DNA of 41,875 nt. It comes from Octopus sinensis. Taxonomy: Eukaryota. The DNA lies in the NCBI RefSeq assembly GCF_006345805.1, contig NW_021835154.1, positions 1-41,875 of the forward strand. The letters are read 5' to 3'. The notes under the pieces were generated by a model. That model was given only the letters and a program-made list of their open reading frames with translations. It did not search any database and was not told the origin of the DNA. Shown here piece by piece: positions 535 to 40,926 of this stretch; positions within the stretch are counted from its first letter, which is position 1; each line of letters starts with the position of its first letter. Made by a program: the position numbers and the translations under genes.

Positions 535-746
535 TGAGCTGGCAGAATCGTTAGCACGCCGGGCGAAATGCTGTGTTGTATTTCGTCTGCCGCTACGTTC
601 TGAGTTCAAATTCCGCCGAGGTCGACTTTGTCTTTCATCCTTTCGGGGTCGATAAATTAAGTTCCAGTTACGCACTGGGGTCGATGTAATCCACTTAATC
701 CGTTTGTCTGTCCTTGTTTGTCCTCTCTGTGTTTAGTAAAGAAATA
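535..746 (+). mobile_element. tRNA-derived SINE, family A (head gagctggcagaatcgttagcacgcc), with 18-bp TSD
   Basis: Matches many other copies in the window (ttctgagttcaaattccgccgaggtcgacttt...ggggtcgat); GGTATACACATACACGTG duplicated at 517-534 and 747-764. Confidence 0.9.
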
Positions 747-5368: not shown

Positions 5369-5545
5369 CATAATAACAACAACAACAACAACAACAACAG
5401 GAGCAGCAAAAATAATAATGGTTTCGAATTTTGGGGGAGGGTTTTATCGATTACATCAACCACGATGTTCAAATGAAGCTTTGTTATATCGATCTCGAAA
5501 GGCGAATTTAATCTCGATGAGGTTCTTCATCCTTTTTATTTCTTA

Positions 5546-5690
5546 TTTGTTTCAGTCATTAGACTGCGGCCATGCTGGGGCACCACCTTGAAGAATTTTT
5601 AGTCGAATGAATCGACTCCAGAACTTGTATTTTTTTAAAGTCTAGTATTTATTCTGTCTGTTTCACCAGTTGTCAAGCGGTGGGGGACAC
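5546..5690 (-). mobile_element. SINE family B, 3' part
   Basis: ttgtttcagtcattagactgcggccatgctggggcaccacc matches the B tail seen in the full copies. Confidence 0.8.
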
Positions 5691-6261
5691 ACAGATGCAA
5701 GACATACATACGTATACATACGCACACATACATACATACAACATACACACACACACACACACACGTATATTTACACACACATATATATGAAAGAAAATGT
5801 CAAAGTAGAAAATGCTAAAATAATTTTATAAAAAACATTTCAGTACCGGTTTCAGTCATTAAGACTTTTTCAACTGTAATTATGCAAGAGAATTAAATTT
5901 AGGAAAAATTAAAAGAAAAGTTTTTTAAAAGAATATTTGTATAGTGTTCAAATACAAGTGGCATTTTCCTTGTTTCTGCCTTTCTCTGTCTCTCTTGTTT
6001 ATTCTTGAGATTCGAGGTCATTGGTAGGGAAGAAGAAGGGGGAGGAGGTACTTAAAAGTCCCTGGCTTTAAGTGTGTCACAAAGGGCCTGACTGGAGGCC
6101 TAACCTTCCGAGTTCTTTCACAGGCCTTAGAAAAACTGAAAGACCGCTGCAATAAGTGTGTGAATCTGAGAGAGGAATATGTTGAATAAAATCATAATCA
6201 ACTGATTCACCTGTATTTTCTCTTACCCAAAGCGAGGAATTTTTCAGCAACCCCTCATATA

Positions 6262-6408
6262 TATACAACAGGTTTCTTTCAGTTTCCATCTACCAAATCC
6301 GCTAACAAGGTTTTTTTCTCGACCTGAGGCTATAGTAGAAGTCACTTGCCCAAGGTGCCACGCAGTGGGAATGCATCCGGATCGAGGAGGTTGGGAAGCA
6401 AGCTTCTT
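6262..6408 (-). mobile_element. SINE family B, head part
   Basis: tttcagtttccatctaccaaatcc...cttgcccaaggtgccacgcagtggg. Confidence 0.8.
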
Positions 6409-7076: not shown

Positions 7077-7419
7077 GATATTATATTATATATATGTATA
7101 TCAACCGATGGTCACTCTCTAATTTATATTATATATATATATTATAATATATATATATATATATATATATCCGCGCACGCACGCACGCACAAACACTCAC
7201 TCACACACATACACACACATACATATACACACACATGCATATAACACGCGCACCTGTAGATCTTTCTATATACATGTATACATATAAACATTATGCATAT
7301 ACGTATATATGCATATAATTATGTCTATGTATGTATGTATGTACGTGTATGAGTATGCATGTATATGTACGTATATGTATGTATATGTGTGTATATATAT
7401 ATATGTGTGTGTATATGTA

Positions 7420-7461
<42 letters not shown>

Positions 7462-7735
7462 TATATGATCGAACGCCACGCTTCTACACAATATATATAT
7501 ATATACACATATACATACATATACGTACATATACATGCATACTCAAACACATACATACATATATACATAATTATATGCATATATAAGTACATGCATAATG
7601 TTTATATGTATACATGTATATAGAAATATCTACAGGTGCGTGTATATATATGCGTGTGTATGTATATGTATGTGTGTGTGTGCATGTGCGTGAGTGTGTG
7701 CGTGCGTGCGTGCGCGCATGTGTCTGTGCGCGGGC
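6935..7735. repeat. Compound (TA)n/(TACA)n/(CA)n/(CGTG)n microsatellite block
   Basis: Direct reading; explains ORFs 7026-7843. Confidence 0.95.
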
Positions 7736-10243: not shown

Positions 10244-10721
10244 TCTTCAATCCAATCACCTTCGTTCCGTTTCCAACTCGATCGAAGATAGCGGCCATAT
10301 AGAATCTTTTCACTGTCAGCTAGAATAGACATTTTGGACCAGTATGCAGACTACAGTAACGATGTGTATATCGATAAAGTCAGTATATACCCATTTGGTG
10401 TAACCTAAGGCCATTCTACGCGGGCTAGTTATTAACACCCTACACCAGTGGTCTGCATGTCCGGTCACAGGACCCAGCCTCTGTAGTCTAATTACTTGTA
10501 GGGACACGGTATTTCGTTATGCAACCATAATATGCTACAAAGTATATTAAATGTTTTTATAAGTCAAAACCGTGTTCTACTGTGTTAGCAGTGCTATTAC
10601 ATCACTTGTTAAGGTTGTCTCTACAGATTTTCTTCTCATTGCTGTTGCTTACATCGGGCGCCTCGGACACGAAACGTCGTAACAAAATCAGTTCTGGCCA
10701 TAATTTCTATAGAGAATGTCT

Positions 10722-11184
10722 TTACTCTTTAACTATTTTACTTGTTTCAGTCATTTGACTGTGGCCATGCTGGAGCACCGCCTTTAGTCGAGCAAATTGA
10801 CCCCCAGGACTTATTCTTTGTAAGTCTAGTACTTATTCTATCGGTCTCTTATGCCGAACCGCTAAGTTACGGGGACGTAAACACACCAGCATCGGTCGTC
10901 AAGTGATGTTGGGGAGACTAACACAGACACACAAATATATAGACACACACATACATATATGTCTTCTAATATAACCTCGGGCTGACCAAAGCCTTGTGAG
11001 TGGATTTGGTACATATATACGACGGGCTTCTTTCAGTTTCCGTCTACCAAATCCACTCACAAGGCTTTGGTCGGCCCGAGGCTATAGTAGAAAGCACCTG
11101 CCCAAGGTGCCACGCAGTGGGACTGAACCCGGAACCATCTGGTTGGTAAACAAGCTACTTATCCCCCAGCCACTCCTACGCTTA
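10722..11184 (-). mobile_element. SINE family B, full length, with an internal inverted duplication
   Basis: Full head-CORE-like-microsatellite-tail structure; 10970-11011 is an inverted copy of 11045-11086. Confidence 0.9.
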
Positions 11185-11776: not shown

Positions 11777-13132
11777 ATTTCAAAGAAGTGTTAATTCAAA
11801 CGCTATTGCCACAGTTATATTCAATTATTGTTTACTGTTACCAAATTCTGAAGTAACTTACGTCTCCTCCCCACCTTTAAGACTTAAGAAACTATGGCAT
11901 GTGTCTTTTCCTTAAACAATGAATTTGTAGAATTATTAGAATATTGGATAAAAAGCTACCAGCATTCACGGACCTTTTCGTTACGAGTTCAAATCCCGCA
12001 GAGACGAACTCTGCGTTTTATCTATTCTTCCTAAGATATTAAAACAGAAGACGCTATTGTTCGGTCTCATGTCTACCCGCATAAAACGTAGCTTGTAATC
12101 CAAGGTATTCTGGATATGGCCACCCTGTCTTTATATATATCAGGAACTGCATTGTACTTCTTTTTTTAAACGATAGGGTAATAATTGAAGAAGATTTGGT
12201 TTCTAATAGGTCGAGGAAATGTCTTGCTATGTTGCTGTTTTTGTCAATGATGAAATTATTTATCCTTAGGTCATTCTCGATTGAGCATATCAAAGGCGTT
12301 CCAGCCATGACCATCTCGAATTTTTATATATCAGAGACTATTATTGTTATTGTATTCTAGTTTTTTTAATTTTAAGACGGTAAGATTAGATTTGAGTGAG
12401 GTTTAGTTGTTATTTCTAGTAAGGCTAGTTACCATGTAGAAGTTCCCTCTATGTGTCATGTTTATGTTGTGGTACTTTGACGTCCAAAGAGTTCTTCACT
12501 ATGTTGGCAACATGGTTGGCAGAAATCACCTCAGGGGCGCGTTCTGCAATAGTGGTCCTGCGTTTCCTTTTTATTTTTTAACCCCCAGGTTTTTATTTAT
12601 TTATTTATCTATCTTCTATGCTATGAGTCAGGAGGACCTAGATAAGGTCTCCGCAACATATGCCTCCTCGCAGGCCACATCTACCCTGCTGGGAATCTCC
12701 ACGCAGATTGCTTTCAGTGATCTGAGTAAAAAAAAAATATTTGTTTATCAGAAAAATCAAAAGATAAGTTTAAGAAAAAAAAACGTTACGGATAGGAAGT
12801 GATTTCACTACACATGAGTGCGGAAATTAAAGTTAAACATCAGAATAGAAGTCCCACCTAAAGTTCTCCCTTTGGTAATCATAATAAATACTTCCTCAAA
12901 AATAGGGAGTGTTCATTTAGTCTAGATTGATGTTCACAGCACTGCTTTTTTTTTTTTTTATAGAAACATAGATAAGAATTGTCCCCAGTTAGATCAGCTG
13001 TATCTTAATACACGCTTTTTATTTTTTGCTGACTTTGGACATATTTTTAGCTTTGGATACAAATTTATATGAAACTGATAATAAAAGCAAAGCAATTCTG
13101 GAAAATTCTAAAATATTCTCGAGTAAGGAGGA

Positions 13133-13541
13133 GGAGGAGTGGCTGTGTGGTAAGTAGCTTGCTAACCAACCACATGGTTCCGGGTTCAGTCCCACTGCGT
13201 GGCATCTTCGGCCAGTGTCTTCTGCTATAGCCCCGGGCCGACCAATGCCTTGTGAGTGGATTTGGTAGATGGAAACTGAAAGAAGCCTGTCGTATATATG
13301 TATATATGTATATAAGTGTGTGCGTATATGTGTGTCTGTGTTTGTCCCCCTAGCGTTGCTTGACAACCGATGCTGGTGTGTTTACGTCCCCGTCACTTAG
13401 CGGTTCGGCAAAAGAGACCGTTAGAATAAGTACTGGGCTTACAAAGAATAAGTCCCGAGGTCGATTTGCTCGACTAAAGGCGGTGCTCCAGCATGGCCGC
13501 AGTCAAATGACTGAAACAAGTAAAAGAGTAAAGAGAGAGAG
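13133..13541 (+). mobile_element. SINE family B, full length
   Basis: ggagtggctgtgtggtaagtagcttgctaaccaaccacatggttccgggttcagtccc ... ccagcatggccgcagtcaaatgactgaaacaagtaaaagag. Confidence 0.92.
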
Positions 13542-14059
13542 AGAGTAAGCGAAACATAAGCGAAACCGCTGAAAAGTGACTTATTAAATGTCGCTGTTAC
13601 AGATTTCTACGTTTAAGTAGTGAACAGCCTCATTTTGTTAAGCTATTGCGTTTGCATCGTAAAAAGCGAAAACATTTCTTACAGAAAAATATATATTTGA
13701 AAGTGATTGCAAATTGAAAATCCATTTCGAAAACACACACACACACACACACACACGCGCGCGTGCGTATGTCTTGGCTTTGTGGTCGCTTTGACGAGAA
13801 GTGAGCTGGTGTTGATTTTCCAGCTTTATGTAATAGTGCTGTTGATTAATTATGGATCGAATTCAGTGCAGAATTGACACGTCATTGTATAACATAATGC
13901 CAACTCATCAGGGTTGCGCGTGATCGAATTATGGATTACTATGAAAATACATAGTCCTCCATTCTTTTTTTGTGTCATTCACTCACACACACACACGTGC
14001 GCACGCACACACACACATATGTATCTATGTATGCATGTATGTATATATGTATGTATGTG

Positions 14060-14127
<68 letters not shown>

Positions 14128-14403
14128 CATACTATATAGACATACATATATATAATTAAAATAAGCAGCAAGGATATCCAGAGGTAATGCAGTACGATCG
14201 TTTCATGCGACTCCATTTAATTGAACAATGCAATCATTATACCAATTTAAAATGTAGAGCAATCTTCAGCTGCATAAAAAACATAGAATTTAATTAAATT
14301 TGAAGGACACATTAGTATAATTTTACCCAAAATCCACAAGAGGATAAGTAGATAGACAAAACATGTTTTACCAACAACATCACAGTTGTATATATATATA
14401 TAC

Positions 14404-14980
14404 AAAATTTAAAGGACTGACCACTAAAAGTGGACGGTCAACATTCTAGATATAGACGTCAAATCGCTATTTTCCACAAAGAATATGTTCTCAAATAAAA
14501 AAACTCAGCACAAACCAAAGCATTCAAAATAAGCAAGACAAATGAAAATATACGAAATAAAAATGATTACCTACGTACCGATCAGTTTCGATTGTTATTA
14601 TCCACGGTAGATTTCCGATCTCAGCGCACCAAAGTGAAGACATTTGAAAGAAACACATAAATATAATTGGATGGACTTTAGGCATGCGAGACTCCAGTCA
14701 AACGTTTTTGTATCTAGTCCTGCAAATTGTATTTCTATATGACAGACTATGCTGATGAGATTACAGGTATCCACATGCGTGGATAATAACAATCGAAACT
14801 GATCGGTACATAGATAATCATTTTTATTTCGTATATTTTCATTTGTTTTGCTTATTTCTAATGCTTTGGTTTGTGCTGAGTTTTTTTATTTGAGAACATA
14901 TTCTTTGTGGAAAATAGCGATTTGACGTCTATATCTAGCATGTTGACCGTCCACTTTTAGTGGTCAGTCCTTTAAATTTT
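14404..14980. repeat. Long inverted repeat (203-bp arms 14404-14606 and 14778-14980, 171-bp spacer), probable Penelope-like inverted pseudo-LTR structure
   Basis: aaaatttaaaggactgaccactaaaagtggacggtcaaca...ttattatccacg is the near-perfect reverse complement of cgtggataataac...tgttgaccgtccacttttagtggtcagtcctttaaatttt. Confidence 0.9.
14747..14813 (+). ncRNA. Type I hammerhead ribozyme (canonical core)
   Basis: Stem I CTATG/CATAG; core CTGATGA (14752-14758); stem II GATT/AATC capped by hairpin TATCCAC-ATGC-GTGGATA; GAAA (14795-14798); stem III ACT-GATC-GGT; cleavage triplet GTA with predicted cut after 14808. Confidence 0.8.
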
Positions 14981-15169
14981 CTATGTAAAAAAATTTTAAT
15001 CTTCGGAATTTTTTAATATGCTAGGCCACTGGTTTTAATTGATTAATATCAATCTCTACCCTTATTAAATTTTATATATATATAGTGTAATAAATATATA
15101 TGCATACATACAACATATATATACGTACCTACATCTACATGTATATATACATGCATATATAAATATATA

Positions 15170-15480
15170 TACGTGAGTACAGGACACCACAACTAGACGT
15201 AGAACTCAACGAGAAACGAAAAAGGAAAAACCAATGTTTTTAGAACAGAAAAACAGAGACGTAGAACTCAACGAGAAACGAAACGGAAAAAACATTTTTT
15301 TACAACAGAAAAACAGAGTACAGGACATACTACACAAGGAAAAATCCCCTATCATCAGCTGTCACTAGTTCGACTCTAGCGTGTTTCGAAGGCAAGGCAG
15401 GACACGACTCGCCAAACTAGTCCTTCATGCGAGAGAATTAAAATAAAATTACCTCGCAGAGGGGTAAACACAAGCAAGAA
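15170..15480 (-). repeat. Interspersed repeat with an internal tandem duplication of about 62 bp and a degenerate hammerhead-like remnant
   Basis: agacgtagaactcaacgagaaacgaaa occurs twice (about 15193 and 15256); minus strand ctct-cgcatgaagg...ccttcgaaacacgc-tagag. Confidence 0.4.
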
Positions 15481-15525
15481 AAAAAAAATCTATCTATATA
15501 TATATATATATATGTATATATATAG

Positions 15526-15905
15526 GGCAGGCGTGGTTGTGTGGTAAGAAGCCTGCTTCCCAACCACATGGATCCAGGTTCAGTCCCCACTGCGTGGCAA
15601 CTGGGGCGAGAGTCTTCTGTTATAGCCTCGGGCCGACCAAAACCTGTGAGTGGCTTTGGTGGACGGAAAGTGAAAGAAGCCCGTCGTATATATATATATG
15701 TGTGTGTGTGTTTGTATCCTTACCCACCATCACCGCTTCATAACCGGTGTTCTTATGTTTACGTCTCTGCAACTTAGCGGTTCGGTAAAAGTTAAAAGGT
15801 ACTGATAGAATAAGTACTCGGCTTAAGAAATAAGTCCTAGGGTAAACTCTTCAGTGCGGTGCTGCAGCATGGCCGTAGTCAAATAACTGAAATAAGTAAA
15901 AGAAT
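15526..15905 (+). mobile_element. SINE family B, full length, diverged
   Basis: Same head, internal (TA)/(TG) tract and tail as 13133-13541. Confidence 0.88.
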
Positions 15906-16240
15906 ATGATTAGTGACCAACGAGCAAATTCCTTTCTCCATTAACTATCAGGTCTCGAAGAGTGACAGAGCTAGGACGGGTGCAGTCCGCTCCGCATGAC
16001 ACTGTTATGAGGACGGCACTTTTGGGTCTGATGTACAAGCCTGTATTGGCTTGGGACCCGGGGCGGGGCCGCAAAGTGAAGGGCTGCAGCCGGTGACATT
16101 TATCTGCTAGTTTTAGCAGATCAAGCGACTGCATACGGGCTCACGCAATTGTCAGTTGTATAAGGTCGTGGTTGTGGTCGTGATGGTGAATGTGGCGGCG
16201 GTGGTTCAATGATTGGTGACCGTGGACAACTTTGGAAGAT

Positions 16241-16648
16241 ACTCTTTTTACTCTTTTACTTGTTTCAGTCATTTGACTGCGGCCATGCTGGAGCACCGCC
16301 TTTAATCGAGCAACTCGACCCCAGGACTTATTCTTTTGTAAGCCCAGTACTTATTCTATCGGTCTCTTTTGCCGAAACGCTAAGTAACGGGGACATAAAC
16401 ACACCAGCATCGGTTGTCAAGCAATGCTAGGGGTACGTAAACACAGACACACAAACAAACACACATACATATATATATATATACATATATACGACAGGCT
16501 TCTTTCAGTTTCCGTCTACCAAATCCACTCACAAGGCATTGGTCGGCCCGGGGCTATAGCAGAAGACACTTGCCAAAGATGCCACGGAGTGGGACTGAAC
16601 CCGTAACCATGTGGTTGGTTAGCAAGCTACTTACCACACAGTCACTCC
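16241..16648 (-). mobile_element. SINE family B, full length
   Basis: Reverse complement of B; begins with (ctttta)n tail. Confidence 0.9.
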
Positions 16649-16849
16649 TCAGAATTTGAAATAACGTACATAGTTTTAAATAATTCTGTTTTTGGATTTG
16701 GTTTGCAAGATTCTTTATATGAGTTCGTGTGTTGAAGCATATTCTGTTGTGTCTGGGAAGTGTCATTTAACACACGCACCGGTAAAATTTCCACTTATTT
16801 CTTATTTTTATTTTCCTAAAATAATTTATTCAGCTTATTAATACTGAAG

Positions 16850-17585: not shown

Positions 17586-17614
17586 TATGTGTGTGTGAAA
17601 ATGCATAAATACGT

Positions 17615-18045
17615 ACTCTTTACTCTTTTACTTGTTTCAGTCATTTGACTGCGACGATGCTGGAGCACCGCCTTTTAGTCAAACAAATCGATCCCCAGGA
17701 CTTATTCTTTGTAAGCCTAGTACTTATTCTATCGGTCTCTTTTGCCGAACCGGTAAGTTACGGGGGCGTAAACACACCAGCATCGGTTGTCAAGTGATGT
17801 TGTGTGTGGGGAGGGAGACAAACACAGACACACAAACACACGCACATACATATATGTATGTATATATATATATACATACGACGAGCTTCTTTCAGTTTCC
17901 ATCTACCAAATCCACTCACAAGGCTTTGGTCGACCCGAGGCTATAATAGTAGAAGACACTTGCCCAAGGTGCCATGCAGTGGGACTGAACCCGGAACCAT
18001 GTGGTTCGTAAGCAAGCTACTTACCACACAGTCACTCCTATGCCT
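17615..18045 (-). mobile_element. SINE family B, full length
   Basis: Reverse complement of B consensus inferred from other copies. Confidence 0.9.
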
Positions 18046-18086
18046 ACGTACGAATACAAATAGAACATAAACTTGTACACAATACG

Positions 18087-19649: not shown

Positions 19650-19827
19650 ATATTTTCGCACAAGGCCAGCAATTTTGGGGGAGATGTAAGTCGATTACAT
19701 CGAACCCAGTGTTTCATTTTCACTGGTACTTGATTTATCGATCTCCTAAAAGGATGAAAGTCGATCTCGGACGAAATACCGCTAAGCATTCTGCCCGTCT
19801 TGCTAACGACTCTGCCAGCTCGTCACC

Positions 19828-19828
<1 letters not shown>
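19650..19828 (-). mobile_element. SINE family A copy
   Basis: Reverse-complement head ctgccagctcgtcacctt directly abutting (TAA)n. Confidence 0.85.
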
Positions 19829-20187
<359 letters not shown>

Positions 20188-20194
20188 TTTCAAT

Positions 20195-20378
20195 ATTTTG
20201 CCACAAGAGCAGCTTGAGGGAGGGGATTAACTCGTTTACATCGATCAGGTGCGTTACTCGAAAGGATGAAAGGCAAAGTCTACCTCGACAGAATCTGAAC
20301 TCAGAACGTAATGACGGGGTGAAAATACTGCTAAGCATTTCGTCCAGCGCGCTAGCGATTCTGCCAGTTCGCCGCCTT
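20195..20378 (-). mobile_element. SINE family A copy
   Basis: ctgccagttcgccgcctt head abutting (TAA)n. Confidence 0.87.
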
Positions 20379-20747: not shown

Positions 20748-21184
20748 ATAATAATAATAATAATAATAGGCCGCTGAGATATATTCATTTCTTCAGGATC
20801 GGTAGTGGATTCTTGATTTAGTACAAATTTAAAATGTTCAGTCTATCTTTTCAGAATTTCATCTTTGCCACTCAACAGTTTTGTTCTGTCGTTAGAAAGA
20901 AAAGGTTCTGTACCACCCTTTTTAAAAACTAAATACATTTCTCAGGTTTTCATACAATACTCTCAAGTTCTGAGAGTTGGCAGCCTGTTCCATCCAATTC
21001 ATGGGCTTTTTTTGCCTACAAGAATTTTTCTTCTCATACAGTTTTTTCTGTGTAGTTTTCTTAGAGGTGATATACAGGGATCGATATATAGTAATCGACT
21101 TAATCCGTTTGTCTGTCCTTGTTTGTTACCTCTGTGTTTCGCCCCTTGTGGGTAGTAAAGAAACAGATATATAGGGATCTGAGT

Positions 21185-22720
21185 GTTTGTCTGAGATCCA
21201 TGCCTTTGTGTCTCTTGTGCATACTTTCTAGCAGAGGTTTAATTTGAGAATCATTCTCATCGAACCAATCTTGGTGCTTGCGTTTGACGAATCCTAGAGT
21301 TTCTTCAGCAGTTGATTTGATGCTGTCACGAATATTGTGCCACAAAAATTCAAGGTCATCGCTTTCCTCTATATTCTCAAATTTTGAATTGAAACGCATT
21401 TCAAAATTTTTTGTCGTTTCTGGAATTTTTAGAGAAGAGGTAATTATTCTTGGATTTGTACTGGATCTCTGTGACCTCTTTGTTTGATTATGGTTTTACA
21501 AATACCTTACTGCGAACCATTCTGCGATCCGAGTAACAGCCGGGTGTTTTGTGAGTTCTGGTTAATTTGAAATCACTTCAATCCTTATTCTTGGTTATAA
21601 CATAGTCAAGCATGTACCAGTTATCAGATCGGGGATGATTACGCTTTTACTTGTTTCAGTCATTTGACTGCGGTCATGCTGGAGCACCGCCTTTTTGTCG
21701 AGTAAATCGACCCCAGGACTTATTCTTTGGAAGCCTAGTACTTATTCTATCAGTCTCTTTTCCTGAACCGCTAAGTTACGGGGACGTAAACACCCCACCA
21801 TTGGTTGTCAAGCAATGATGGGGGGACAAGCACAGACACACAAACATATACATACATACATATATATACATATATACGACGAGCTTCTTCCAGTTTCCGT
21901 CTGCCAAATCCACTCACAAGGCTTTGGTCGGCCCGAGGCTATAGTAGAAGACATTTGCCCAAGGTGCCACACAGTGGGAATGAACCCATAACTGTGTAGT
22001 TGGTAAGCAAGCTACTTACCACACAGCCACTCCTGCGCCTAAATGATTCTAAATGTTTTTTGTATTTATTTGCCTGCTGAAACACTGTGTTTGCGAATGT
22101 TAGACCAAACTGTTGACAAAAGGACAGCAATCCTAAACCGCTTTCATTCATCGCTTTTCCATGTTCCATGTTTTCCTGCTACTTTTGATCCCACTGTGTG
22201 TTTGTTACCCATTCTGGCATTAAAATCGCCTATCAGTATGGTTTTGTCATGGTATGGAATTTTACTGACAACTGTCTGCAGTTCGGAGTAGATGTTGTGT
22301 ATAGATGAGGGTTTATCTATTGGTATATAGAATGTAATGAGACGCTCATCAACAGCTTGAGGGATGGATGGCAATTTTCGAAGTAGAGTCGATTTAATGG
22401 CAAAGCCAGCACAATGAATTCTTAGTTCATTCGCCGGTTTTCCATTAAAAAAAAAAAACGGGGAAAAAAAAATTAAAGAAAAGAAAAAGAAAAAGGAAAA
22501 GAAAAATGTACAACCACTTCCAGCTTCTAATTCACCAGTGTCCGCAAGCCTGATTTCACTTAGAAGAGCAATATCAACGTTATAGGAGAGAATAACCTTC
22601 GCAATTATTGCAGTTTTTCGATCTAGGCTGTCTTTGCTGTTTTGTAAAGTTCTTACGACCAAAAATTAGCATGCTTCTTTTATTCCTTTCATCTTAATTT
22701 CGACTGCAATAGACTGAATG
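21185..22720 (-). mobile_element. Decayed RTE-clade LINE, APE endonuclease region and linker (pseudogenised, split by a SINE)
   Basis: Translations RKTAIIAKVILSYNVDIALLSEIRLADTG, ILIGDFNARMG, GLGLLSFCQQFGLTFANTVFQQANKYK and KRKHQDWFDENDSQIKPLL are RTE/BovB-type endonuclease and linker motifs; frameshifts, T-run expansion and SINE B insertion at 21645-22041. Confidence 0.85.
21645..22041 (-). mobile_element. SINE family B, full length, nested in the RTE remnant
   Basis: Reverse complement of B; interrupts the RTE reading frame. Confidence 0.9.
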
Positions 22721-22989: not shown

Positions 22990-23996
22990 TTTCACTCTTT
23001 AAGGAAGCTGACAAATACAAAAAAAAAAAGAAGCCATAGTACCTAACAACTATGAAGAAAAAGAAGAAACAACAAAAGCTGTAAAACAACTGAAATCCAA
23101 ACTAAAACTGGAACAGCAACGGATCATGATAAAACAATGGCAGGAAAATCCCCTTCATGGCAAATACTGGGTTACGCTAAACAGAAAAGAAATAGACAAA
23201 GCAAAATCCCAGCAATGGCTGAGAAGATCAAGACTCAAAGCAGAGACTGAAGGATTTTTAATTGCAGCACAAGACCAAAGCCTCCCCACCAGAAATGACA
23301 AAAAGCATGTAATGAAAAGAAATTCAACTTCAGAATGTTTGGAGATGGAGAAGAAACAATAAATCAATTTGTCTCTGGCTGCCCAGTCCTGGCTAAGGAG
23401 GAATATATTCAGACACGACAGAGTTGGATCCTATATACACTGGAAGCTATACCAACACTGTAGAATAACAACAGAAAAAAGTTGGTATAGCCACATGCCA
23501 GAATAGGTCACAGAAAATGAGAAAGCAACCATTCTATGGAATATGCCAATACATGCAGATAGAGAAATTAAGGCCAATGGGCCGGATATAGTTGTCAGAG
23601 ATCATCAAGAAAAAATTGCTTTCTAATCGATGTATCAATACCAACGGCTGACAATGTTTTTCTAAAAGAAACGGGGAAACTTTCAAAATACAAGACATAG
23701 AAACAGAGGTAACTCGAATGTGAAGTCTAAAAACAGAAACAGTTCCTATCATAGAAGACGCATTGGGTATGATAAAAAATTATTCAGACAAATACATAAC
23801 AAAAACACCAGGACTAACAAGTATATATTACATACAGAAAATAGCACTACAAGGTACCACACACATCCTACGTAAAATACTTTCAATACAGTGAAAATAA
23901 AGGTACCAGAATTAACCGCTGCACATGCCTAAGGCACACAAAGCTGCGATCGGTAGTGCAGTGAAAGCACGCGATGGAAATAAGGCTACTGAATTA
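22990..23996 (+). mobile_element. 3' part of an R4/Dong-like non-LTR retrotransposon (zinc knuckle and restriction-like endonuclease), frameshifted
   Basis: W..NPLHGKY, LKAETEGFLIAAQDQSL, degenerate SGCPVLAKEEY..RHDRVG, ANGPDIVVRD..IDVSIP (PD..D motif, about 23570-23645), IQKIALQGTTHILRKILSIQ*; ends directly in (TAA)n. Confidence 0.88.
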
Positions 23997-24138
23997 AAAA
24001 TAATAATAAAACAATAATAATAATAATAATAATATAATAATAATAATAATAAGAATAATAATAATAATAAAACAATAATAAAAATAATAATAATAATAAT
24101 ATAATAATAATAATATAATAATAATGATAATAATAATA

Positions 24139-24176
<38 letters not shown>

Positions 24177-24459
24177 TAAAACAATAATAATAATAATAAT
24201 AATAATATAATAATAATAATAATAATAATAATGATAATAATAATAATAATAATAATAATGATAATAATAATAATAATAATATAATAAAACAATAATAATA
24301 ATAATAATAATATAATAATAATACAAAACAATAATAATAATAATAATAATAATAAAATAATAATAATAATAATATAATATAATAATATAATGATAATAAA
24401 ACAATAATAATAATAATAAAACAATAATAATAATATAATAATAATAATAATAATAAAAC

Positions 24460-24492
<33 letters not shown>

Positions 24493-24520
24493 CAATAATA
24501 ATAATAATAATAATAAAACA

Positions 24521-24561
<41 letters not shown>

Positions 24562-24585
24562 CAATAATAATAATAATAATAAAAC

Positions 24586-24616
<31 letters not shown>

Positions 24617-24646
24617 TAATAATAATAATAATAATAATAATAAAAC

Positions 24647-24683
<37 letters not shown>

Positions 24684-24695
24684 TAATAATAATAA

Positions 24696-24726
<31 letters not shown>

Positions 24727-24824
24727 CAATAATAATAATAATAATAAAACAATAATAATAATAATAATAATAATAATATAATAATAATAAATAATATAAT
24801 AATAATAATAATAAAACAATAATA

Positions 24825-24897
<73 letters not shown>

Positions 24898-24898
24898 C

Positions 24899-24958
<60 letters not shown>
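23996..24958. repeat. About 960-bp imperfect (TAA)n array with recurring AAAAC/TATA interruptions
   Basis: Direct reading; explains the 300-418 aa I/L/Y ORFs in the track. Confidence 0.97.
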
Positions 24959-25487
24959 CCATTCTGTTATATAGACAAGTCCTGGATTTGACAGCGCAAA
25001 AAAGTGGCACGAACAGAAACCCGAAGGCATCGTCGAAAATGATAATGCAAAAATCTTATGGGATTTTATGATTCCGTGCGACCATGAGATAGCGAATAGG
25101 AAGCCAGACATAATGTTAATTGACAAAGAAAGCAAACGATGCTGGATCATAGATATAGCATGCCCCAAAAGGTATGCGATAAGGAAGAAGGAGAAGTCGA
25201 TAGATATGACAGGTTAGCTTGGGAGGTTAAGCAGTTGTGGTGGATGAAAAAGTGGTAGTAGTATCAATAACTGTCGGAGCCCTGGGAAAAGTGAGTAAAA
25301 ATTTTGAGAAGTACATGGAACAAATAAGGGCTGCAATAACAGTGGAGCACTTGCAGAAAACAGCACTGCTTGGAACCACTCGAATACTCCGGATGGTGCT
25401 CAAAAAATAAAGGGTGTTACCTTAGTTCACTGGTAGTGAACAGCTGACAGCGTAGTACATCTCAAGCGTTAGAAGCTGTGCAAAGGC

Positions 25488-25924: not shown

Positions 25925-26530
25925 AATGGTTTCAAATTTTGGCACAAGGCCAGCAATTTCGAGGGGGTGGGTACCTCGATTTAATCAATCCTAGTGTTTA
26001 ACTGGTAGTTATTTTATCGACCCCGAAAGGATGAAAGACAAAGTCGACTCCGGCACGAGGATTTGAACTCAGAACGTATAAAGCTGGAAAGAATGTCCGC
26101 AGGAGTGGCTGTGTGGTAAGTAGCTTGCTAACCAACCACATGGTTCCGGGTTCCGTCCCACTGCGTGGCATCTTGGGCAAGTGTCTTCTACTATAGCCCC
26201 GGGCCGACCAATGCCTTGTGAGTGGATTTGGAATACGGAAACTGAAAGAAGCCTGTCGTATATATGTATATAAGTGTGTGTGTATATGTTTGTGTGTCTG
26301 TGTTTGTCCCCCTAGCATTGCTTGACAACCGATGCTGGTGTGTTTACGTCCCCGTAACTTAGCGGTTCGGCAAAAGAGACCGATAGAATAAGTACTGGGC
26401 TTACAAAGAATAAGTCCCGGGGTCGATTTGCTCGACTAAAAGGCGGTGCTCCAGCATGGCCGCAGTCAAATGACTGAAACAAGTAAAAGAGTAAAAGAGT
26501 AAAGTGTAAGCATTTTGTCGAATGCGCTAA
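25925..26530 (-). mobile_element. SINE family A copy split by an oppositely oriented SINE B
   Basis: A body 25925-26098 resumes at about 26504 (taagcattttgtcgaatgcgctaac). Confidence 0.8.
26099..26503 (+). mobile_element. SINE family B, full length, nested in SINE A
   Basis: Nearly identical to 13133-13541. Confidence 0.92.
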
Positions 26531-27708: not shown

Positions 27709-27736
27709 TCAATTTGTTCCTGTTTTTATGAGTCTC

Positions 27737-27935
27737 ACTTACTCTTTACTCTCTTTTACTTTGTTTCAGTTATTTGACCGAGGCCATGCTGGAGCACCGC
27801 CTTGAGTCGAAGAAATCGACCCCCAGACTTATTCTTTGTTAGCCTAGTACTTATTCTATCGGTCTCTTTTGCCGAACTGCCAAGTTACGGGGACGTAAAC
27901 ACACCAGCATCGGTTGTCAAGCGATGTTAGAGGGA

Positions 27936-27981
<46 letters not shown>

Positions 27982-28154
27982 CATATATACGACGGGCTTC
28001 TTTCAGTTTCCGTCTACCAAATCCACTCACAATGCTTTGGTCGACCCGAGGCTGTAGTAGAAGACACTTGCCCAAGGTGCCACGCAGTGGGACTGAACCC
28101 AGAACCATGTGGTTGGTAAGTAAGCTACTTACCACACAGCCACACTCCTGCGCC
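27737..28154 (-). mobile_element. SINE family B, full length
   Basis: Reverse complement of B. Confidence 0.9.
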
Positions 28155-28460
28155 TTGAACTTTGAAATATGTGGTACATAAAATATCGTTCTAATCAAAC
28201 CGAAAATGTTAATTTATGTTCAACTTGTAATTGTTTAGCCCCAGATCGGCTCTTAACGGACAGATATATGATCAAAGACTTTCCAGATTTGATTCTTTAA
28301 TCTTCCTTTTCCCAGTCATAACGTACCTTGAGCTACATTCTCCAATGATGATAGGGTGTAACTGGAAGATTTAGCTACTTTTTGTTGCAGGTTGAACGAC
28401 TGGGCAAAAGGAGTCTTCGCTGACGTTTCCTGCAGCCTGTTCGTGGCGGCTACAGTATAC

Positions 28461-28877
28461 ATGTCTTTACTACCCACAAGGGGCTAAACATAGAGGGGAG
28501 AAACAAGGACAGACAAACAGATTAAGTCGATTACATCGACCCCAGTGCGAAACTGGTACTTTATTTATCGACCCCGAAAGGATGAAAGGCAAAGTCGAAC
28601 TCGGCGGAATTTGAACTCAGAACGTAACGACAGACGAAATACCTATTTCTTTACTACCCACAAGGGGCTAAACATAGAGAGGACAAACAAAGACAGACAA
28701 ACGGATTAAGTCGATTATATCGACCCCAGTGCGTAACTGGTACTTATTTAATCGACCCCGGAAGGATGAAAGGCAAAGTTGACCTCGGCGGAATTTGAAC
28801 TCAGAACGTAACGGCAGACGAAATACCATTAAGATGTTCGCACGGTGCGCTAACGTTCCTGCCAGCTCGCCGCCTTA
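28461..28877 (-). mobile_element. SINE family A dimer with 17-bp TSD
   Basis: TGGCGGCTACAGTATAC at 28444-28460 and 28878-28894; two near-identical bodies with a 184-bp period. Confidence 0.93.
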
Positions 28878-29920: not shown

Positions 29921-30752
29921 AACCGGCCTGTTTGGTGTCTCAAATTTACGTTAAATCAGTGTTTCTCAAAGGGGAGGCCTATGGGACGGTCGGACAAGTT
30001 GTTTTGAGAAAATTTGGTTTAAATGTTTGACAAGTTAGCACCGTCCATTGGACGGGGGTGGGGCGTTTTGCTCGTATACACATATTTAGTTAACAAATAT
30101 ATAGATAACATGTGTATATGTAGTTACCAATGAGATATATCAATTATTCGAATCAAAAACCACATCAAACTTATGTCCCCTAATACAAGTAGCGCATCCC
30201 CCTTTAAAAACAATGTTTCCAAGGATACACAATATTCGAACCTACAACGTTTCCAACTAGATATTCCTAGTTGAAAAGGGCAAATATGACAACAACAACA
30301 GACTAGAGAGAAAAAATCATATAACACACATTCAGGCAACACTAACACACATCTTAGTAGACGTGTCAAACTAATCTGCATCTTGCAAGGACGAGCACTT
30401 TGTTACCCTGCTTCACAAACACCGAGCTAGGAAGAAAATCATACACCGTTACGGAGTGACATTTATAGAGAAGCATTTAAAAAAAAAATACAAAGTAACA
30501 ATCCATATTATAACGCTGAAAATAGCCAATCAATAGAAGCTAGCATGTCATTAGCTTAATGCGGTTGCCGATTACAGAAGTTAAAAGGAGACAACATATT
30601 ACTCTAGAGAGACAAACCCTCATAAATCTAGAAACTTCCCCTCTCTAAAGACTAGCCGCAGGGACCGATTGACTATTGAAACTTTATTAAACCACCATCC
30701 TTCGCGCATGCCCCGTCGACTTCCCTGTAAGGTTAATCAATTAACGGAAAAA

Positions 30753-31040
<288 letters not shown>

Positions 31041-31930
31041 TTTAGTTTTTTGTGTAGTTTTCAGTATTGTTTCCTCGATCTTATAAATTTGTTTAATAAA
31101 CCTTTAATATTAAGTGGAAGATTCTGGAAGTATTGAAAACAACGTGTCCTTGACAGAATTAATTATTCATCTCTTAACCGAGTATAAAGATTAAAAAAAA
31201 TACATCAGCGGGAATTAAAAATCGCATTAACCAATAATGCAGTTGTCTACAACAACAACAACAACTACTACTACTACTACTACTACAACATGCGGACGCG
31301 CACACACACCTTACTGTAAACAGCGATTTCTATTGATAAACTTACGTACATGTATTATATACACACAAAACACACAATAGCGCACTCACATTATTGTACA
31401 TGCTATTATTTATAATTACCGAATGAAATATAAACGGATAGACATTTCTTACTGGTAGTCTTCTTCACCTACACTCACTCCCTCTCTCTCTCTCACACGC
31501 ACACACACACACTCACCTTTTATAAGTTTCAATGATAGAACTGTGGCCATTCTGGGGCACCGCTTTCAAAGGTTTTAGTCGATAATATCTATGTCTTCAG
31601 CACTTATTTAATCGATTTCTATCGAATGGCTAACTTAACATTTGACGTAAAGCAACAAAGATGGACATACCATTTTACACCAGAATGCACAAACGCAGAG
31701 GCATGCACACACACGCGCGCGCACACACATATACACACAGACACACACTCATGCAAACATACATTTAATAAACACTATGTTTAACTGCAGTGTTCTCTTT
31801 GTAGGACAAACCGAATAACAGCTCGACTAGTTTCATTTTGTTATTACTGGTTACTAGTGAGTGTCTTCGTTCAACTTAGAATGGAAGAAAGCATCTTACA
31901 ACTTCATATAACAAACGATAACACAATAAA

Positions 31931-32741: not shown

Positions 32742-33362
32742 AGAGCGGCGAGATGACAGAATTGTTAGCAAGCCGGGAAAGCTGGTTAACGGCATTTCGC
32801 CTGCTTTTACTTCCTGTGTTCAAATTATGCTGATATCGACTTTGCCTTTTCTCTCCTTTCGGGAGTCGATAAAATAACTACCAGCTGAGCACAGGGTTCG
32901 ATGTAATCGACTTACTCCCGCTCCCGAAATTACTACCCTAGTGCCAAACTTTGAAACCAAGGAGATGGCATAATCGTTAGCACGCCAGGCATGCTTAACG
33001 GTATTTCGCCTGCCGTTACGTTGTGAGTTCAAATTCCGCCGAGGTCGACTTTGCCTTTCATCTTTCCGGGGTCGACAAAATAAGTACCAGTTACGCACTG
33101 ATGTCCATGTAATCGACTTAATACCTATATTTGTCCTTGTTTGTCCCCTCTGTGTTTAGCCCCTTGTGGGTAATAAAAAAATAGGTATTTCGCCTGTCTT
33201 TACGTTCTGAGTTCGTATTCCACCAAAGTCGACTTTGCCTTTCATCCTTTCGGGGTCGGTAAAATAAGTAAAATAAGTACCAGTCGAACACCGGGGTAAA
33301 TGTAATCGACTAGCCCCTCCCTTAAAATTGCTGGCCTCGTGCCAAAATTTGAAATCAATATT
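32742..33362 (+). mobile_element. SINE family A cluster: monomer followed by dimer
   Basis: Three A bodies; dimer junction aaaaaaata-GGTATTTCG at 33184-33192. Confidence 0.88.
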
Positions 33363-37515: not shown

Positions 37516-38187
37516 TTGGCAGAATCGTTAACACTCCGGACGAAATGCTTAGCAGTATTTCGTCCGACTTTACGTTCTGAGTTCAAATTACGCCGAGGTC
37601 GACTTTGCCTTTCATCCTTTTGGAGTCGATAAAATAATTACCTGCTGAGCGCTGTGGTTGATGCAATTCCCCAAAATTGCCGCTCTTGTTGCAAAATTTG
37701 AAACCATTATTGTCTCCACCGGTGTTGGTATGTTTGTTGGTTGTGACAACCGGTGTTGGTATGTTTACGTCCCCATAACCTACCAGTTCGGCAAAAGTGA
37801 CAGATAGAATAAGTACCAGGCTGTTATATCGCAATACTACACAGTGGCTGTGTGAGTTACGAAATCCTCGTCGCCACTGCTACATCGCACGTTCGGATGA
37901 CCTCTACTCAACCCTAGACTTCTCCCTCTATATCTACGTATTGGGCTAGCCTACTTCATCGTCCGGGGGCGTCCACACAACACAGGCTTTATAAAAAAAT
38001 GTACTGGGGTCAATTCATTCAACTGAAAATTCTTCAAGGCAGTGCCCCAGCATTACCGCAGGAAGTAAGTAGGGGACAATCCTTTTTTACTATAGTCACA
38101 AGGCCTGAAGTTTAGGGGAGGGGCCTAGTCGATTTCATCGGCCCTAGTGCATAACTGGTACTTATTTAATCGACCCCGAAAGGATGA

Positions 38188-38189: not shown

Positions 38190-38256
<67 letters not shown>

Positions 38257-38264
<8 letters not shown>

Positions 38265-38869
38265 AACTAAAGTTATTGAACAAACAAATGCAAGGTCATC
38301 CGCATAACATTTCATAATTCGAACATTTAATCATAGAATATACATATAAACATCGCGCAAGATGGAACATAATTCATCTGTACTAGCATACAAGCATATA
38401 ATAATAATAAGGTGCGACAAAAAATTTTTTTCATCACAGTTTAGAGTTAATACTTTAGCGATTCAAAAAAATACATTTTTAAAAAAAACATTACAACACC
38501 TAGAAAGTAAAAATATAATATAAAGTAATATATAAAAATATATAGGTATATAAAAATATATAAAAAATATATATATATATACATATAGGAGCATATAAAA
38601 AATATATAATATATATCATGTAAATAAAATAAAAGTTCATCGTTTAGAAATCTTATTAAATAATTATTCAAGTAAAAGAAGCCTTATAGTTAAAAAGGGA
38701 ACCATATTTACTTATCCCAAGTATTTACTTATCTGTATGCTTGTACGGATGAATTATGTTCCATCTTGCGGGATGTTTATATGTATATTCTATGATTAAA
38801 TGTTCGAATTATGAAATGTTATGCGGATAACCTTGCATTTGTTTGTTCAATAACTTTAGTTTGATATAT
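38257..38869. repeat. Long inverted repeat (arms about 38257-38398 and 38736-38869) with AT-rich spacer, next to (TA)n
   Basis: atatatcaaactaaagttattgaacaaacaaatgcaagg...gatggaacataattcatc is the reverse complement of gatgaattatgttccatc...ccttgcatttgtttgttcaataactttagtttgatatat. Confidence 0.88.
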
Positions 38870-38947
38870 TTGTCTCTTTCAATAGAGCACTTCTATAGCA
38901 GTCCTATTAATCTTTTTGTTCCTGACAAGAAACAATCACTGTATTAT

Positions 38948-40691: not shown

Positions 40692-40926
40692 GAAGGTGGC
40701 TAGCTGGTAGAATAGATAGCACACCTAGTAAAATGCTTATCTGTATTTCATCCGTCTTTAACGTTCTGAGTTCAAATTCCGCCGAGGTCGACTTTAAAAT
40801 AACTCACAGTTGAGCACTGGGGTTGATGTAATCGATCAAACCTCTCTCTTGAAATTGCTGGCCTTGTGCCAAAATTTGTGCATATGAAGGCGGCGAGCTA
40901 GCAGAATCGTTATGGCACCTGACAAA
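40692..40926 (+). mobile_element. SINE family A copy followed by a second A head fused to the mariner remnant
   Basis: gaaggtggctagctggtagaat... and gaaggcggcgagctagcagaatcgtt. Confidence 0.8.

What the first reader, a model, noticed from the sequence alone, without database searches (positions are those of the whole stretch)
14747..14813. Complete canonical hammerhead ribozyme
Seen: every catalytic-core position is canonical (C3-U4-G5-A6-U7-G8-A9, G10.1-C11.1, G12-A13-A14-A15.1, GUA cleavage triplet). Stem I is a perfect CUAUG/CAUAG, stem II carries a 7-bp hairpin, and stem III is short with a palindromic GAUC loop. Known: this type I topology with a weak palindromic stem III is characteristic of hammerheads in Penelope-like pseudo-LTRs and retrozymes, which often need dimerisation. 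It is invisible to the ORF track and to standard repeat labels, and is the best candidate for a functional RNA here.
Basis: partly seen in the sequence, partly recalled or inferred. Interest (0 to 1): 0.85.

Follow-up and report, generated by a model that had tools for sequence, protein, structure and literature searches.

The report
Hammerhead ribozyme in a retroelement relic
The reported self-cutting RNA motif is really there and complete, but it sits in a decayed head-to-head pair of short retroelement fragments of an already well-described kind, so it is a good ordinary example and not a discovery.

Summary
That covers the full hammerhead core, the 5-bp helix I, the long helix II with its 7-bp hairpin, the short helix III with a GAUC loop, and the GUA cut site at 14808|14809. 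Chance is an unlikely explanation: a matched descriptor hit 0 of 300 shuffled windows. A covariance model I built from 37 unrelated phage hammerheads ranks it first in the window (26 bits, E about 1e-6).

Rfam reports no hammerhead family for it, even at E<=10. A control showed that clear phage hammerheads also miss Rfam's gathering cut-offs.

- The motif straddles the inner edge of a ~600-bp inverted repeat with 203-217-nt arms that are 95-97% identical.
- The twin copy lacks an intact 5' half.
- A second, different hammerhead-like motif lies on the minus strand at 14187-14275.
- (TA)n tracts flank the whole cluster.

This matches published descriptions of 5'-truncated, inverted Penelope-like-element or pLTR fragments. 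The window has no RT or GIY-YIG coding sequence, no tandem repeat, and no other copies, so covariation could not be tested. The motif is most likely an inert relic that would cleave well only as a dimer. It is a new member of a known kind, of low to moderate interest.

The parts
14747..14813 (+). HHR1, a complete type-I hammerhead motif. Helix I CUAUG/CAUAG (14747-51 / 14809-13); core CUGAUGA 14752-58; helix II 14759-94; GAAA 14795-98; helix III with GAUC loop 14798-14807; A17 = 14808; predicted cut 14808|14809.
   Evidence: Read directly. Descriptor hit 0/300 shuffled windows. No Rfam hammerhead hit.
14778..14994 (+). Right arm of the inverted repeat, i.e. the sense copy of the repeat unit. 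It begins in the helix-II loop, so it carries the 3' half of HHR1 plus ~186 nt downstream of the cut site. The well-matched core is 14778-14980.
   Evidence: the repeat finder I1: 217 nt, 95% complementary. 11 differences in total, 5 of them in the last 14 nt, so ~97% over 203 nt.
14390..14606 (-). Left arm, the inverted copy of the same unit read on the minus strand. It carries only the 3' half of the ribozyme (GUGGAUAAUAACAAUCGAAACUGAUCGGUACGUAG, about 14606-14571). Its outer end abuts a short (TA)7 run at 14389-14402.
   Evidence: R1 gives no hit here at E<=10.
14607..14777 (.). 171-nt spacer between the arms. Its right end supplies the 5' half of HHR1. Read on the minus strand, its left end gives GCG-CUGA(UGA missing)-GAU..AUCUAC, which resembles a ribozyme 5' half only weakly.
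   Evidence: Alignments. Similarity of the two inner halves is marginal (p~0.015-0.04 against shuffles and random genomic segments).
14187..14275 (-). HHR2, a second and unrelated hammerhead-like motif: AUGCAG | CUGAAGA | 58-nt helix II (U.U at 10.1/11.1, then UGC/GCA and a long imperfect hairpin) | GAAA | C-GAUC-G | U A | CUGCAU. Predicted cut 14193|14192 on the minus strand.
   Evidence: R1: 11.5 bits, E 0.22, second-best hit. Relaxed descriptor (helix I >=6, no helix II rule): 0.01 hits per shuffled window. Helix II insert folds at -12.4 kcal/mol, z about -2.2. No sequence similarity to the palindrome.
14038..14154 (.). (TA)58 microsatellite flanking the cluster on the left. A TA-rich tract at 15073-15171 flanks it on the right.
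   Evidence: Tandem Repeats Finder.

Best explanation
HHR1 is a genuine hammerhead-ribozyme sequence carried in the 3'-terminal part of a short repeat derived from a retroelement.

The locus (about 14155-14994) is a small graveyard of 5'-truncated fragments of the Penelope-like-element type (pseudo-LTR or retrozyme-like), inserted into a (TA)n microsatellite:
- Two copies of one unit lie head-to-head with their 3' ends pointing outwards. Only the right copy keeps the whole ribozyme.
- A third, unrelated fragment carries a second hammerhead-like motif on the opposite strand.

In the parent element the ribozyme would cut the element's long or multimeric transcript after GUA. Here that is between 14808 and 14809, leaving a 2',3'-cyclic phosphate and a 5'-OH. 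Cutting is most efficient when two copies pair through the self-complementary CUGAUCGG segment to form an extended helix III, a 'double hammerhead'.

At this locus the motif is most likely an inert relic. No partner lies in the same orientation, no coding part of the element is present, and a read-through transcript would fold into a long hairpin that sequesters the ribozyme's 3' half.

Shown: the motif, its statistics, the inverted-repeat anatomy, the second motif, the TA flanks and the folding preferences.
Inferred: the Penelope-like origin, the catalytic competence, the need for dimerisation, and the inactivity at this locus.
For: - The motif is complete and non-random. It is the top hit, at 26 bits, of a model trained on unrelated hammerheads.
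- The inverted repeat has 203-217-nt arms at 95-97% identity, and the ribozyme sits ~186 nt from the outer (3') end of the unit.
- PMC8557442 describes Penelope-like insertions as heavily 5'-truncated, often with an inverted 5'-truncated copy adjacent, hammerheads in the pLTR near the 3' end, and in some clades (Naiads) a bias for (TA)n. PMC4209133 reports 'dual' hammerheads ~100-700 bp apart on opposite strands and mostly solitary truncated copies.
- HHR1 and HHR2 are on opposite strands with cut sites 615 nt apart, and TA tracts flank the cluster.
- Short helix I (5 bp), long helix II, a G10.1-C11.1 pair and a palindromic helix III/loop 3 match features listed in PMC4209133.
- The dimer minimum-energy structure is the double hammerhead at -38.4 kcal/mol, against 2 x -16.6 for two monomers.
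- GC of the unit is 31-32%. Animal hammerhead repeats are reported at <45-50% GC (PMC7229834).
- A 2026 preprint (10.64898/2026.07.22.740005) links animal retrozymes to pLTRs and describes dispersed monomer copies as probably immobile offspring.
Against: - No Rfam hammerhead family matches, even at E<=10. Control phage hammerheads do appear in that mode.
- No RT or GIY-YIG domain was found in 148 ORF segments of the window, so the link to Penelope-like elements rests on architecture and literature alone.
- No other copy of the unit was found in the window, in public collections, in papers, or through a protein-proxy search. Conservation and covariation are therefore untested.
- The 'unpaired nucleotide between A9 and G10.1' typical of PLE min-hammerheads is absent.
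- In the monomer, the hammerhead fold (-11.6) loses to an alternative fold (-16.6) that pairs CUGAU with AUCGG.
- At ~3% arm divergence, an intact 67-nt motif is expected about one time in three by neutrality alone. Intactness is therefore not evidence of selection.
- The host organism was not identified.
Confidence: 0.6

Rival explanations
1. The unit is a non-autonomous animal retrozyme. Its RNA is cut at two hammerheads, ligated into a ~170-400-nt circle, and copied back into DNA. This locus would be a solo or rearranged monomer of such a family.
For: It has a type-I hammerhead with a short palindromic helix III, low GC and a unit size in the right range. Retrozyme monomers are dispersed in genomes, and retrozymes are related to pLTRs (10.64898/2026.07.22.740005; PMC7229834). 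On the minus strand, the left copy's would-be cut site and the HHR2 cut site are 383 nt apart.
Against: The defining arrangement, tandem direct repeats with at least two consecutive complete hammerheads, is absent. The copies are inverted, not direct. The fragments carrying HHR1 and HHR2 share no sequence. A hint of terminal redundancy (14705-14738 vs 14955-14984) is not significant (p~0.07).
Confidence: 0.2
2. The ~600-bp palindrome is a foldback or MITE-type DNA transposon with long terminal inverted repeats, and the hammerhead-like sequence is a passenger.
For: The arms are long and nearly identical. The outer ends can be read as TA|CAAAATTT...AAATTTTC|TA. Another long-TIR element with TA flanks lies in the same window at 38242-38884.
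Against: The TA 'duplication' is uninformative inside a TA microsatellite, and the terminal bases differ (C vs G). No significant similarity exists to the other inverted-repeat element. To my knowledge hammerheads have not been described in MITEs, whereas inverted truncated copies are a documented Penelope-like trait (PMC8557442). A second hammerhead-like motif next door is unexplained by this model.
Confidence: 0.1
3. The locus acts as a hairpin-RNA gene. Read-through transcription yields a ~200-bp duplex that is diced into small RNAs against the parent retroelement family, and the ribozyme is incidental.
For: The whole palindrome folds as one hairpin at -356 kcal/mol, with arms 95-97% complementary.
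Against: Nothing here shows transcription, and any inverted transposon pair folds this way. No tool or data available here can test it.
Confidence: 0.05
4. The motif is a chance match, or the palindrome is an assembly artefact, so there is no biological feature.
For: Rfam is silent. Relaxed descriptors do hit shuffled sequence at ~0.01 per 42 kb, which means hundreds of hits per large genome. Complex inverted PLE insertions are known to trouble assemblies (PMC8557442).
Against: About 23 specified or complementary positions lie in the 5' half alone. The strict descriptor hit 0/300 shuffled windows, not counting the extra 7-bp hairpin. A second motif lies within 620 nt. An assembly error would not create the ribozyme itself.
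Confidence: 0.05

Closest known systems
Hammerheads in the pseudo-LTRs of Penelope-like elements (Cervera & de la Pena 2014, PMC4209133; Craig et al. 2021, PMC8557442)
   Same: Type-I topology; short helix I (5 bp) without a defined loop 1; enlarged helix II; G10.1-C11.1; palindromic 15.2-16.2 and loop 3, implying dimeric action. The copies are solitary and truncated, paired motifs lie on opposite strands a few hundred bp apart, an inverted 5'-truncated copy is present, and TA microsatellites flank the cluster.
   Different: No RT/GIY-YIG ORF or direct pLTR pair is in the window. HHR1 has no unpaired nucleotide between A9 and G10.1. Helix II is a 4-bp base, a 5x5 internal loop and a 7-bp hairpin, not a continuous 7-8-bp stem. 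Helix III is present (2 bp plus a tetraloop), whereas the strict 'min-HHR' has none.
Animal non-LTR retrozymes and amphibian, schistosome or cricket satellite hammerheads (Cervera & de la Pena 2020, PMC7229834; Li et al. 2026 preprint 10.64898/2026.07.22.740005)
   Same: Type-I hammerhead; a 4-bp helix II base; helix III of 1-2 bp capped by a palindromic tetraloop (as in HHR_Amex1/2); low GC; a unit of a few hundred nt. HHR2's U.U at the base of helix II recalls HHR_Amex2.
   Different: No tandem direct repeats. No recognisable loop 1/loop 2 tertiary-contact nucleotides. Loop 2 is replaced by a long hairpin extension. The copies are inverted.
Phage or bacterial type-I-topology hammerheads (IMG/VR loci used to build model R1)
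   Same: Identical core and three-helix junction, which is enough for the model to score HHR1 at 26 bits over its full length.
   Different: The phage motifs have a stable helix III of 5-11 bp and a compact 12-19-nt helix II. HHR1 has a 3-pair helix III and a 36-nt helix II.

Membership tests
Hammerhead ribozyme (type I) | Conserved core C3 U4 G5 A6 N7 G8 A9, G12 A13 A14, A15.1-U16.1, and H17 (not G) at the cut site | tested here: met
   All positions are canonical at 14752-58, 14795-98 and 14807-08.
Hammerhead ribozyme (type I) | Three helices around the core, with helix I open and helices II and III closed | tested here: met
   Helix I has 5 bp, helix II 4+7 bp and helix III 3 pairs. A model trained on other hammerheads aligns all 52 positions.
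Hammerhead ribozyme (type I) | Score above the curated Rfam threshold for a hammerhead family | tested here: not met
   There is no hammerhead hit at gathering or at E<=10. Control: clear phage hammerheads also fail gathering but do appear at E<=10. This is an operational criterion, not a defining one. The miss is probably due to the 36-nt helix II and the weak helix III (inference).
Hammerhead ribozyme (type I) | Conservation and compensatory changes in the stems across homologues | tested here: inconclusive
   No homologous copies could be obtained. The only relative, the left arm, shares just the 3' half. Its single possible compensatory pair in helix I depends on a marginal alignment.
Hammerhead ribozyme (type I) | Mg2+-dependent self-cleavage at H17 | not testable with these tools
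   This needs in vitro transcription of monomer and dimer constructs.
Penelope-like element pLTR hammerhead (min-HHR class) | Location in repeats flanking an RT + GIY-YIG ORF | tested here: not met
   No RVT or GIY-YIG Pfam hit in 148 ORF segments of the window. The literature says most genomic copies are solitary truncated fragments, so this does not exclude the origin.
Penelope-like element pLTR hammerhead (min-HHR class) | [quoted passage not shown] | tested here: not met
   In HHR1, G14759 follows A9 directly and pairs with C14794.
Penelope-like element pLTR hammerhead (min-HHR class) | Palindromic 15.2-16.2 and loop 3, allowing a dimeric helix III | tested here: met
   CUGAUCGG is self-complementary with two G.U pairs. 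The homodimer minimum-energy structure is a double hammerhead.
Penelope-like element pLTR hammerhead (min-HHR class) | Insertion architecture: 5'-truncated copies, an adjacent inverted copy, and a microsatellite target | tested here: met
   compared with PMC8557442.
Animal non-LTR retrozyme | Tandem direct repeats (150-450 bp) with at least two consecutive complete hammerheads | tested here: not met
   No tandem repeat with a period above 62 nt between 13000 and 16500. No direct copy of the unit in the window.
Animal non-LTR retrozyme | Expression as linear and circular RNAs of unit length | not testable with these tools
   No transcript data are available.

The most novel reading that the evidence does not exclude
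The high-identity inverted copy ends within 1-3 nt of the apex of the ribozyme's own 7-bp helix-II hairpin: the right arm starts at 14778, in the AUGC loop. If this recurs genome-wide, it would mean the reverse transcriptase of these elements stalls or switches template at the ribozyme hairpin. The hammerhead's structure would then help generate the puzzling inverted, 5'-truncated insertions typical of Penelope-like elements.
Probability: 0.08. Interest if true: 0.5.

Novelty: new member of a known kind. Interest (0 to 1): 0.3.

Why it matters
The result adds one more well-preserved example to the thousands of type-I hammerheads already catalogued in animal retroelements. It also shows that such motifs escape Rfam-based annotation and are caught only by descriptors or purpose-built models. 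The locus is a compact textbook case: an intact ribozyme, a truncated inverted twin, a second variant ribozyme and a TA-microsatellite target. It could serve as a seed for a genome-wide census in the source species. It does not open a new question by itself.

Tried and rejected
- **Rfam.** I ran it at gathering on the whole window, then at E<=10 on 901 nt and on 91 nt. No hammerhead family appeared; the only hits were microRNA-like matches to the TA-rich tract at 15095-15180, which are low-complexity noise. The positive control showed the gathering threshold is too strict for clear phage hammerheads as well.
- **Search for other copies.**
  - Two patterns against the metagenome collection and one each against the viral and prokaryote-genome collections returned nothing or six chance 19-mer hits with no CUGAUGA upstream.
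  - A sequence-string search of the literature gave only a primer coincidence.
  - A protein-proxy search with the 44-codon open frame across the arm found no candidates.
- **Organism identification.** The mariner ORF gave only widespread mariner fragments and a weak Octopus bimaculoides hit. I did not pursue this further because it would not change the verdict.
- **Left copy as a decayed full hammerhead.** The inner-region similarity is marginal (p 0.015-0.04), so the question is left open against simple truncation at 14606.
- **Terminal redundancy of the unit,** which would indicate a rolling-circle or tandem origin: not significant (p~0.07).
- **Relatedness of the palindrome to the inverted-repeat element at 38242-38884:** not significant.
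- **The 'palindrome' at 7169-7719:** it is just TA/TACA microsatellite.
- **Bacterial promoter and terminator scan:** irrelevant to a eukaryotic locus and below the shuffle expectation.
- **tRNA scan for SINE heads:** none found.

Full report
**Observation.**

The sequence at 14747-14813 (+) reads CUAUG-CUGAUGA-GAUU-ACAGG-UAUCCAC-AUGC-GUGGAUA-AUAAC-AAUC-GAAA-CU-GAUC-GG-U-A-CAUAG.
- the canonical core C3-A9, the G10.1-C11.1 pair, and G12-A15.1;
- the A15.1-U16.1 pair and the GUA triplet with A17 at 14808;
- a perfect 5-bp helix I;
- a helix II made of a 4-bp base, a 5x5 internal loop and a 7-bp hairpin;
- a helix III of three pairs capped by the palindromic loop GAUC.

Helix I is the open helix, so the topology is type I. 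The predicted scissile bond is 14808|14809.

**Is it more than chance?**

- CTGATGA occurs five times on the two strands of the window, and only this occurrence has the rest of the motif.
- A descriptor at the observed stringency finds this site and nothing in 300 dinucleotide-shuffled windows. A relaxed descriptor expects 0.013 hits per window. Neither descriptor counts the additional 7-bp hairpin.
- Rfam 15 gives no hammerhead family at gathering thresholds, nor at E<=10 when only 901 nt or 91 nt are searched.
- As a control I fetched obvious hammerheads from phage contigs. They also fail Rfam's gathering thresholds but are reported in E-value mode, at 40.3 and 22.5 bits. The gathering negative is therefore uninformative. 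The E-value negative says the candidate is geometrically atypical for the Rfam seeds.
- I then built a covariance model from 37 phage hammerheads of type-I topology and searched the window with filters off. The candidate is the top hit at 26.0 bits, E about 1e-6 (rough calibration), aligned over all 52 model positions with the 23 extra helix-II nucleotides as an insertion. The runner-up scores 11.5 bits.
- The training sequences were chosen with the same kind of descriptor, so this is a probabilistic restatement and not a fully independent test.

- Positions 14390-14606 and 14778-14994 are inverted repeats: 217 nt at 95% complementarity. Five of the eleven differences lie in the outermost 14 nt, so the core 203 nt are about 97% identical.
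- BLAST sees the whole of 14397-14987 as one imperfect palindrome.
- The right arm starts inside the AUGC loop of helix II. The 3' half of the ribozyme is therefore part of the repeat, and the 5' half lies in the 171-nt spacer.
- The left copy, read on the minus strand, has the identical 3' half apart from one change in helix I. Upstream it reads GCG-CUGA-GAU-CGGAA-AUCUAC, with the UGA of the core missing.
- That stretch could be a decayed 5' half or unrelated sequence. The similarity is marginal (p 0.015-0.04), and the model does not detect a hammerhead there.
- The sharp drop from ~97% to ~45% identity at the hairpin apex fits best with a copy truncated at that point, and less well with uniform decay.
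- No other copy of the unit exists in the window. There is no tandem repeat with a period above 62 nt nearby.

**A second motif.**

The model's second hit lies on the minus strand at 14275-14187: AUGCAG-CUGAAGA-(58 nt)-GAAA-C-GAUC-G-U-A-CUGCAU.
- It has a perfect 6-bp helix I, a canonical core, and a one-pair helix III (two pairs counting A15.1-U16.1) with the same palindromic GAUC loop.
- Its 58-nt helix II folds as a long imperfect hairpin (-12.4 kcal/mol, z about -2.2), but with a U.U at the 10.1/11.1 position.
- A descriptor without any helix-II rule expects 0.01 such hits per shuffled window. Finding one within 620 nt of HHR1 is therefore unlikely by chance.
- The fragment that carries it (about 14155-14385) shares no sequence with the palindrome.
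- It is bounded by a (TA)58 tract at 14038-14154 and a short TA run at 14389-14402. A TA-rich tract lies to the right of the palindrome at 15073-15171.

**What it most likely is.**

The published anatomy of Penelope-like elements fits this locus closely:
- Insertions are heavily 5'-truncated, often with an inverted 5'-truncated copy adjacent. Hammerheads sit in the pseudo-LTR near the 3' end, and Naiad-clade elements show an insertion bias for (TA)n (PMC8557442).
- Hammerheads of these elements have a short helix I, a large helix II and a palindromic helix III. They occur mostly as solitary truncated copies, sometimes as pairs 100-700 bp apart on opposite strands (PMC4209133).
- Animal non-LTR retrozymes carry similar type-I hammerheads in tandem 170-400-bp repeats (PMC7229834). 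A 2026 preprint derives them from pLTRs and describes dispersed monomers as probably immobile offspring (10.64898/2026.07.22.740005).

I therefore read the locus as a cluster of truncated fragments of the Penelope-like or pLTR-derived kind in a TA microsatellite. This rests on architecture and literature only. A Pfam scan of 148 ORF segments found no reverse transcriptase or GIY-YIG domain in the window. It found only a mariner transposase remnant and a LINE endonuclease remnant.

**How it would work.**

- In the parent element the ribozyme would cleave long or multimeric transcripts after GUA.
- As a monomer, the hammerhead fold (-11.6 kcal/mol) is less stable than an alternative that pairs CUGAU with AUCGG (-16.6), and helix III has essentially zero probability.
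- Two copies are predicted to form the classical double hammerhead with a 10-bp intermolecular helix III (-38.4 kcal/mol, against -33.2 for two monomers). This agrees with the dimer dependence reported for hammerheads with such weak helix III.
- At this locus there is no second intact copy in the same orientation.
- A transcript through the whole palindrome would fold into a hairpin of about -356 kcal/mol that sequesters the ribozyme's 3' half.
- With arms ~3% diverged, an intact 67-nt motif is expected roughly a third of the time under neutrality, so intactness is not evidence of selection.

The motif is thus probably competent in a dimeric construct but inert here. These last points are inference.

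**Rivals.**

- *True retrozyme.* This fails the tandem criterion, and a hint of terminal redundancy is not significant.
- *Foldback or MITE DNA transposon.* The possible TA|...|TA ends suggest it, as does a second long-TIR element at 38242-38884. However, the TA 'duplication' is meaningless inside a TA repeat, the two elements are not detectably related, and this model leaves the neighbouring HHR2 unexplained.
- *Hairpin-RNA locus.* This cannot be tested here.
- *Pure chance or an assembly artefact.* Both are unlikely for the ribozyme itself.

**Limits.**

- I could not obtain any homologous copy. Scans of the metagenome, viral and prokaryotic genome collections gave nothing or chance 19-mers. 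A literature string search and a protein-proxy search were also empty.
- The organism is unidentified. The window looks like a microsatellite- and SINE-rich invertebrate genome.

**Verdict.**

The feature is a new member of a known kind: a type-I hammerhead of the retroelement class, with an unusually extended helix II. It is embedded in a truncated inverted insertion and most likely non-functional at this site. Interest is low to moderate (0.3). The one thread worth a census is whether inverted copies of this family habitually break at the ribozyme's helix-II hairpin.

Noticed in passing
window 14187-14275 (-): A second hammerhead-like motif on the opposite strand: a 6-bp helix I, core CUGAAGA, a 58-nt helix II with U.U at its base, and a GAUC-looped minimal helix III. 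It lies in an unrelated ~230-nt fragment between two TA runs.
   Followed up: yes
window 5838-5879 (-): A weak third candidate: UUACAG-UUGAAAA-AGUC UUAAU GACU-GAAA-CCGG-UA-CUGAAA. This would be the U3-A8 variant core with a loop-less palindromic helix III, as in published min-hammerheads. Helix I has a mismatch and the model gives only 11 bits (E 0.34). It sits in a ~590-nt stretch that splits a SINE-like copy (5532-5664 / 6257-6408).
   Followed up: partly
window 10720-11184, 13125-13550, 15520-15906, 16240-16650, 17611-18046, 21639-22044, 26098-26511, 27733-28156: At least eight copies of a ~420-bp interspersed repeat at 75-93% identity, probably a SINE. Two of them bracket the hammerhead cluster. 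No tRNA-like head was detected by ARAGORN.
   Followed up: partly
window 38242-38884: An inverted-repeat element with 151-nt arms (93% complementary; the inner 136 nt are 97% by BLAST) and a 341-nt spacer. It abuts a (TA)n tract on the left and TATAT on the right, so it looks like a MITE or foldback. It is not detectably related to the hammerhead palindrome.
   Followed up: partly
window 40888-41382 (+): A mariner/Mos1-type transposase remnant (Pfam Transposase_1, DDE_3). Its closest database relatives are 70-85% identical fragments from many eukaryotic assemblies.
   Followed up: partly
window 22147-22665 (-) and 21103-21495 (-): A remnant of a LINE apurinic-type endonuclease (weak Exo_endo_phos hit), interrupted by a low-complexity insertion.
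   Followed up: no
window 536-736, 28461-28877, 32745-33360, 37517-37667: Another repeat family, partly in local tandem or inverted arrangement, whose spurious ORFs share the peptide ...RPRKDERQSRPRRNLNSERS...
   Followed up: no
window 15195-15318: Two tandem copies of a 62-nt unit (89% matches), about 200 nt to the right of the palindrome.
   Followed up: no
window 19823-20340, 23912-25170, 30669-31136: Very long trinucleotide (ATT/AAT-type) microsatellite arrays that create 100-400-codon pseudo-ORFs of I/L/Y runs.
   Followed up: no
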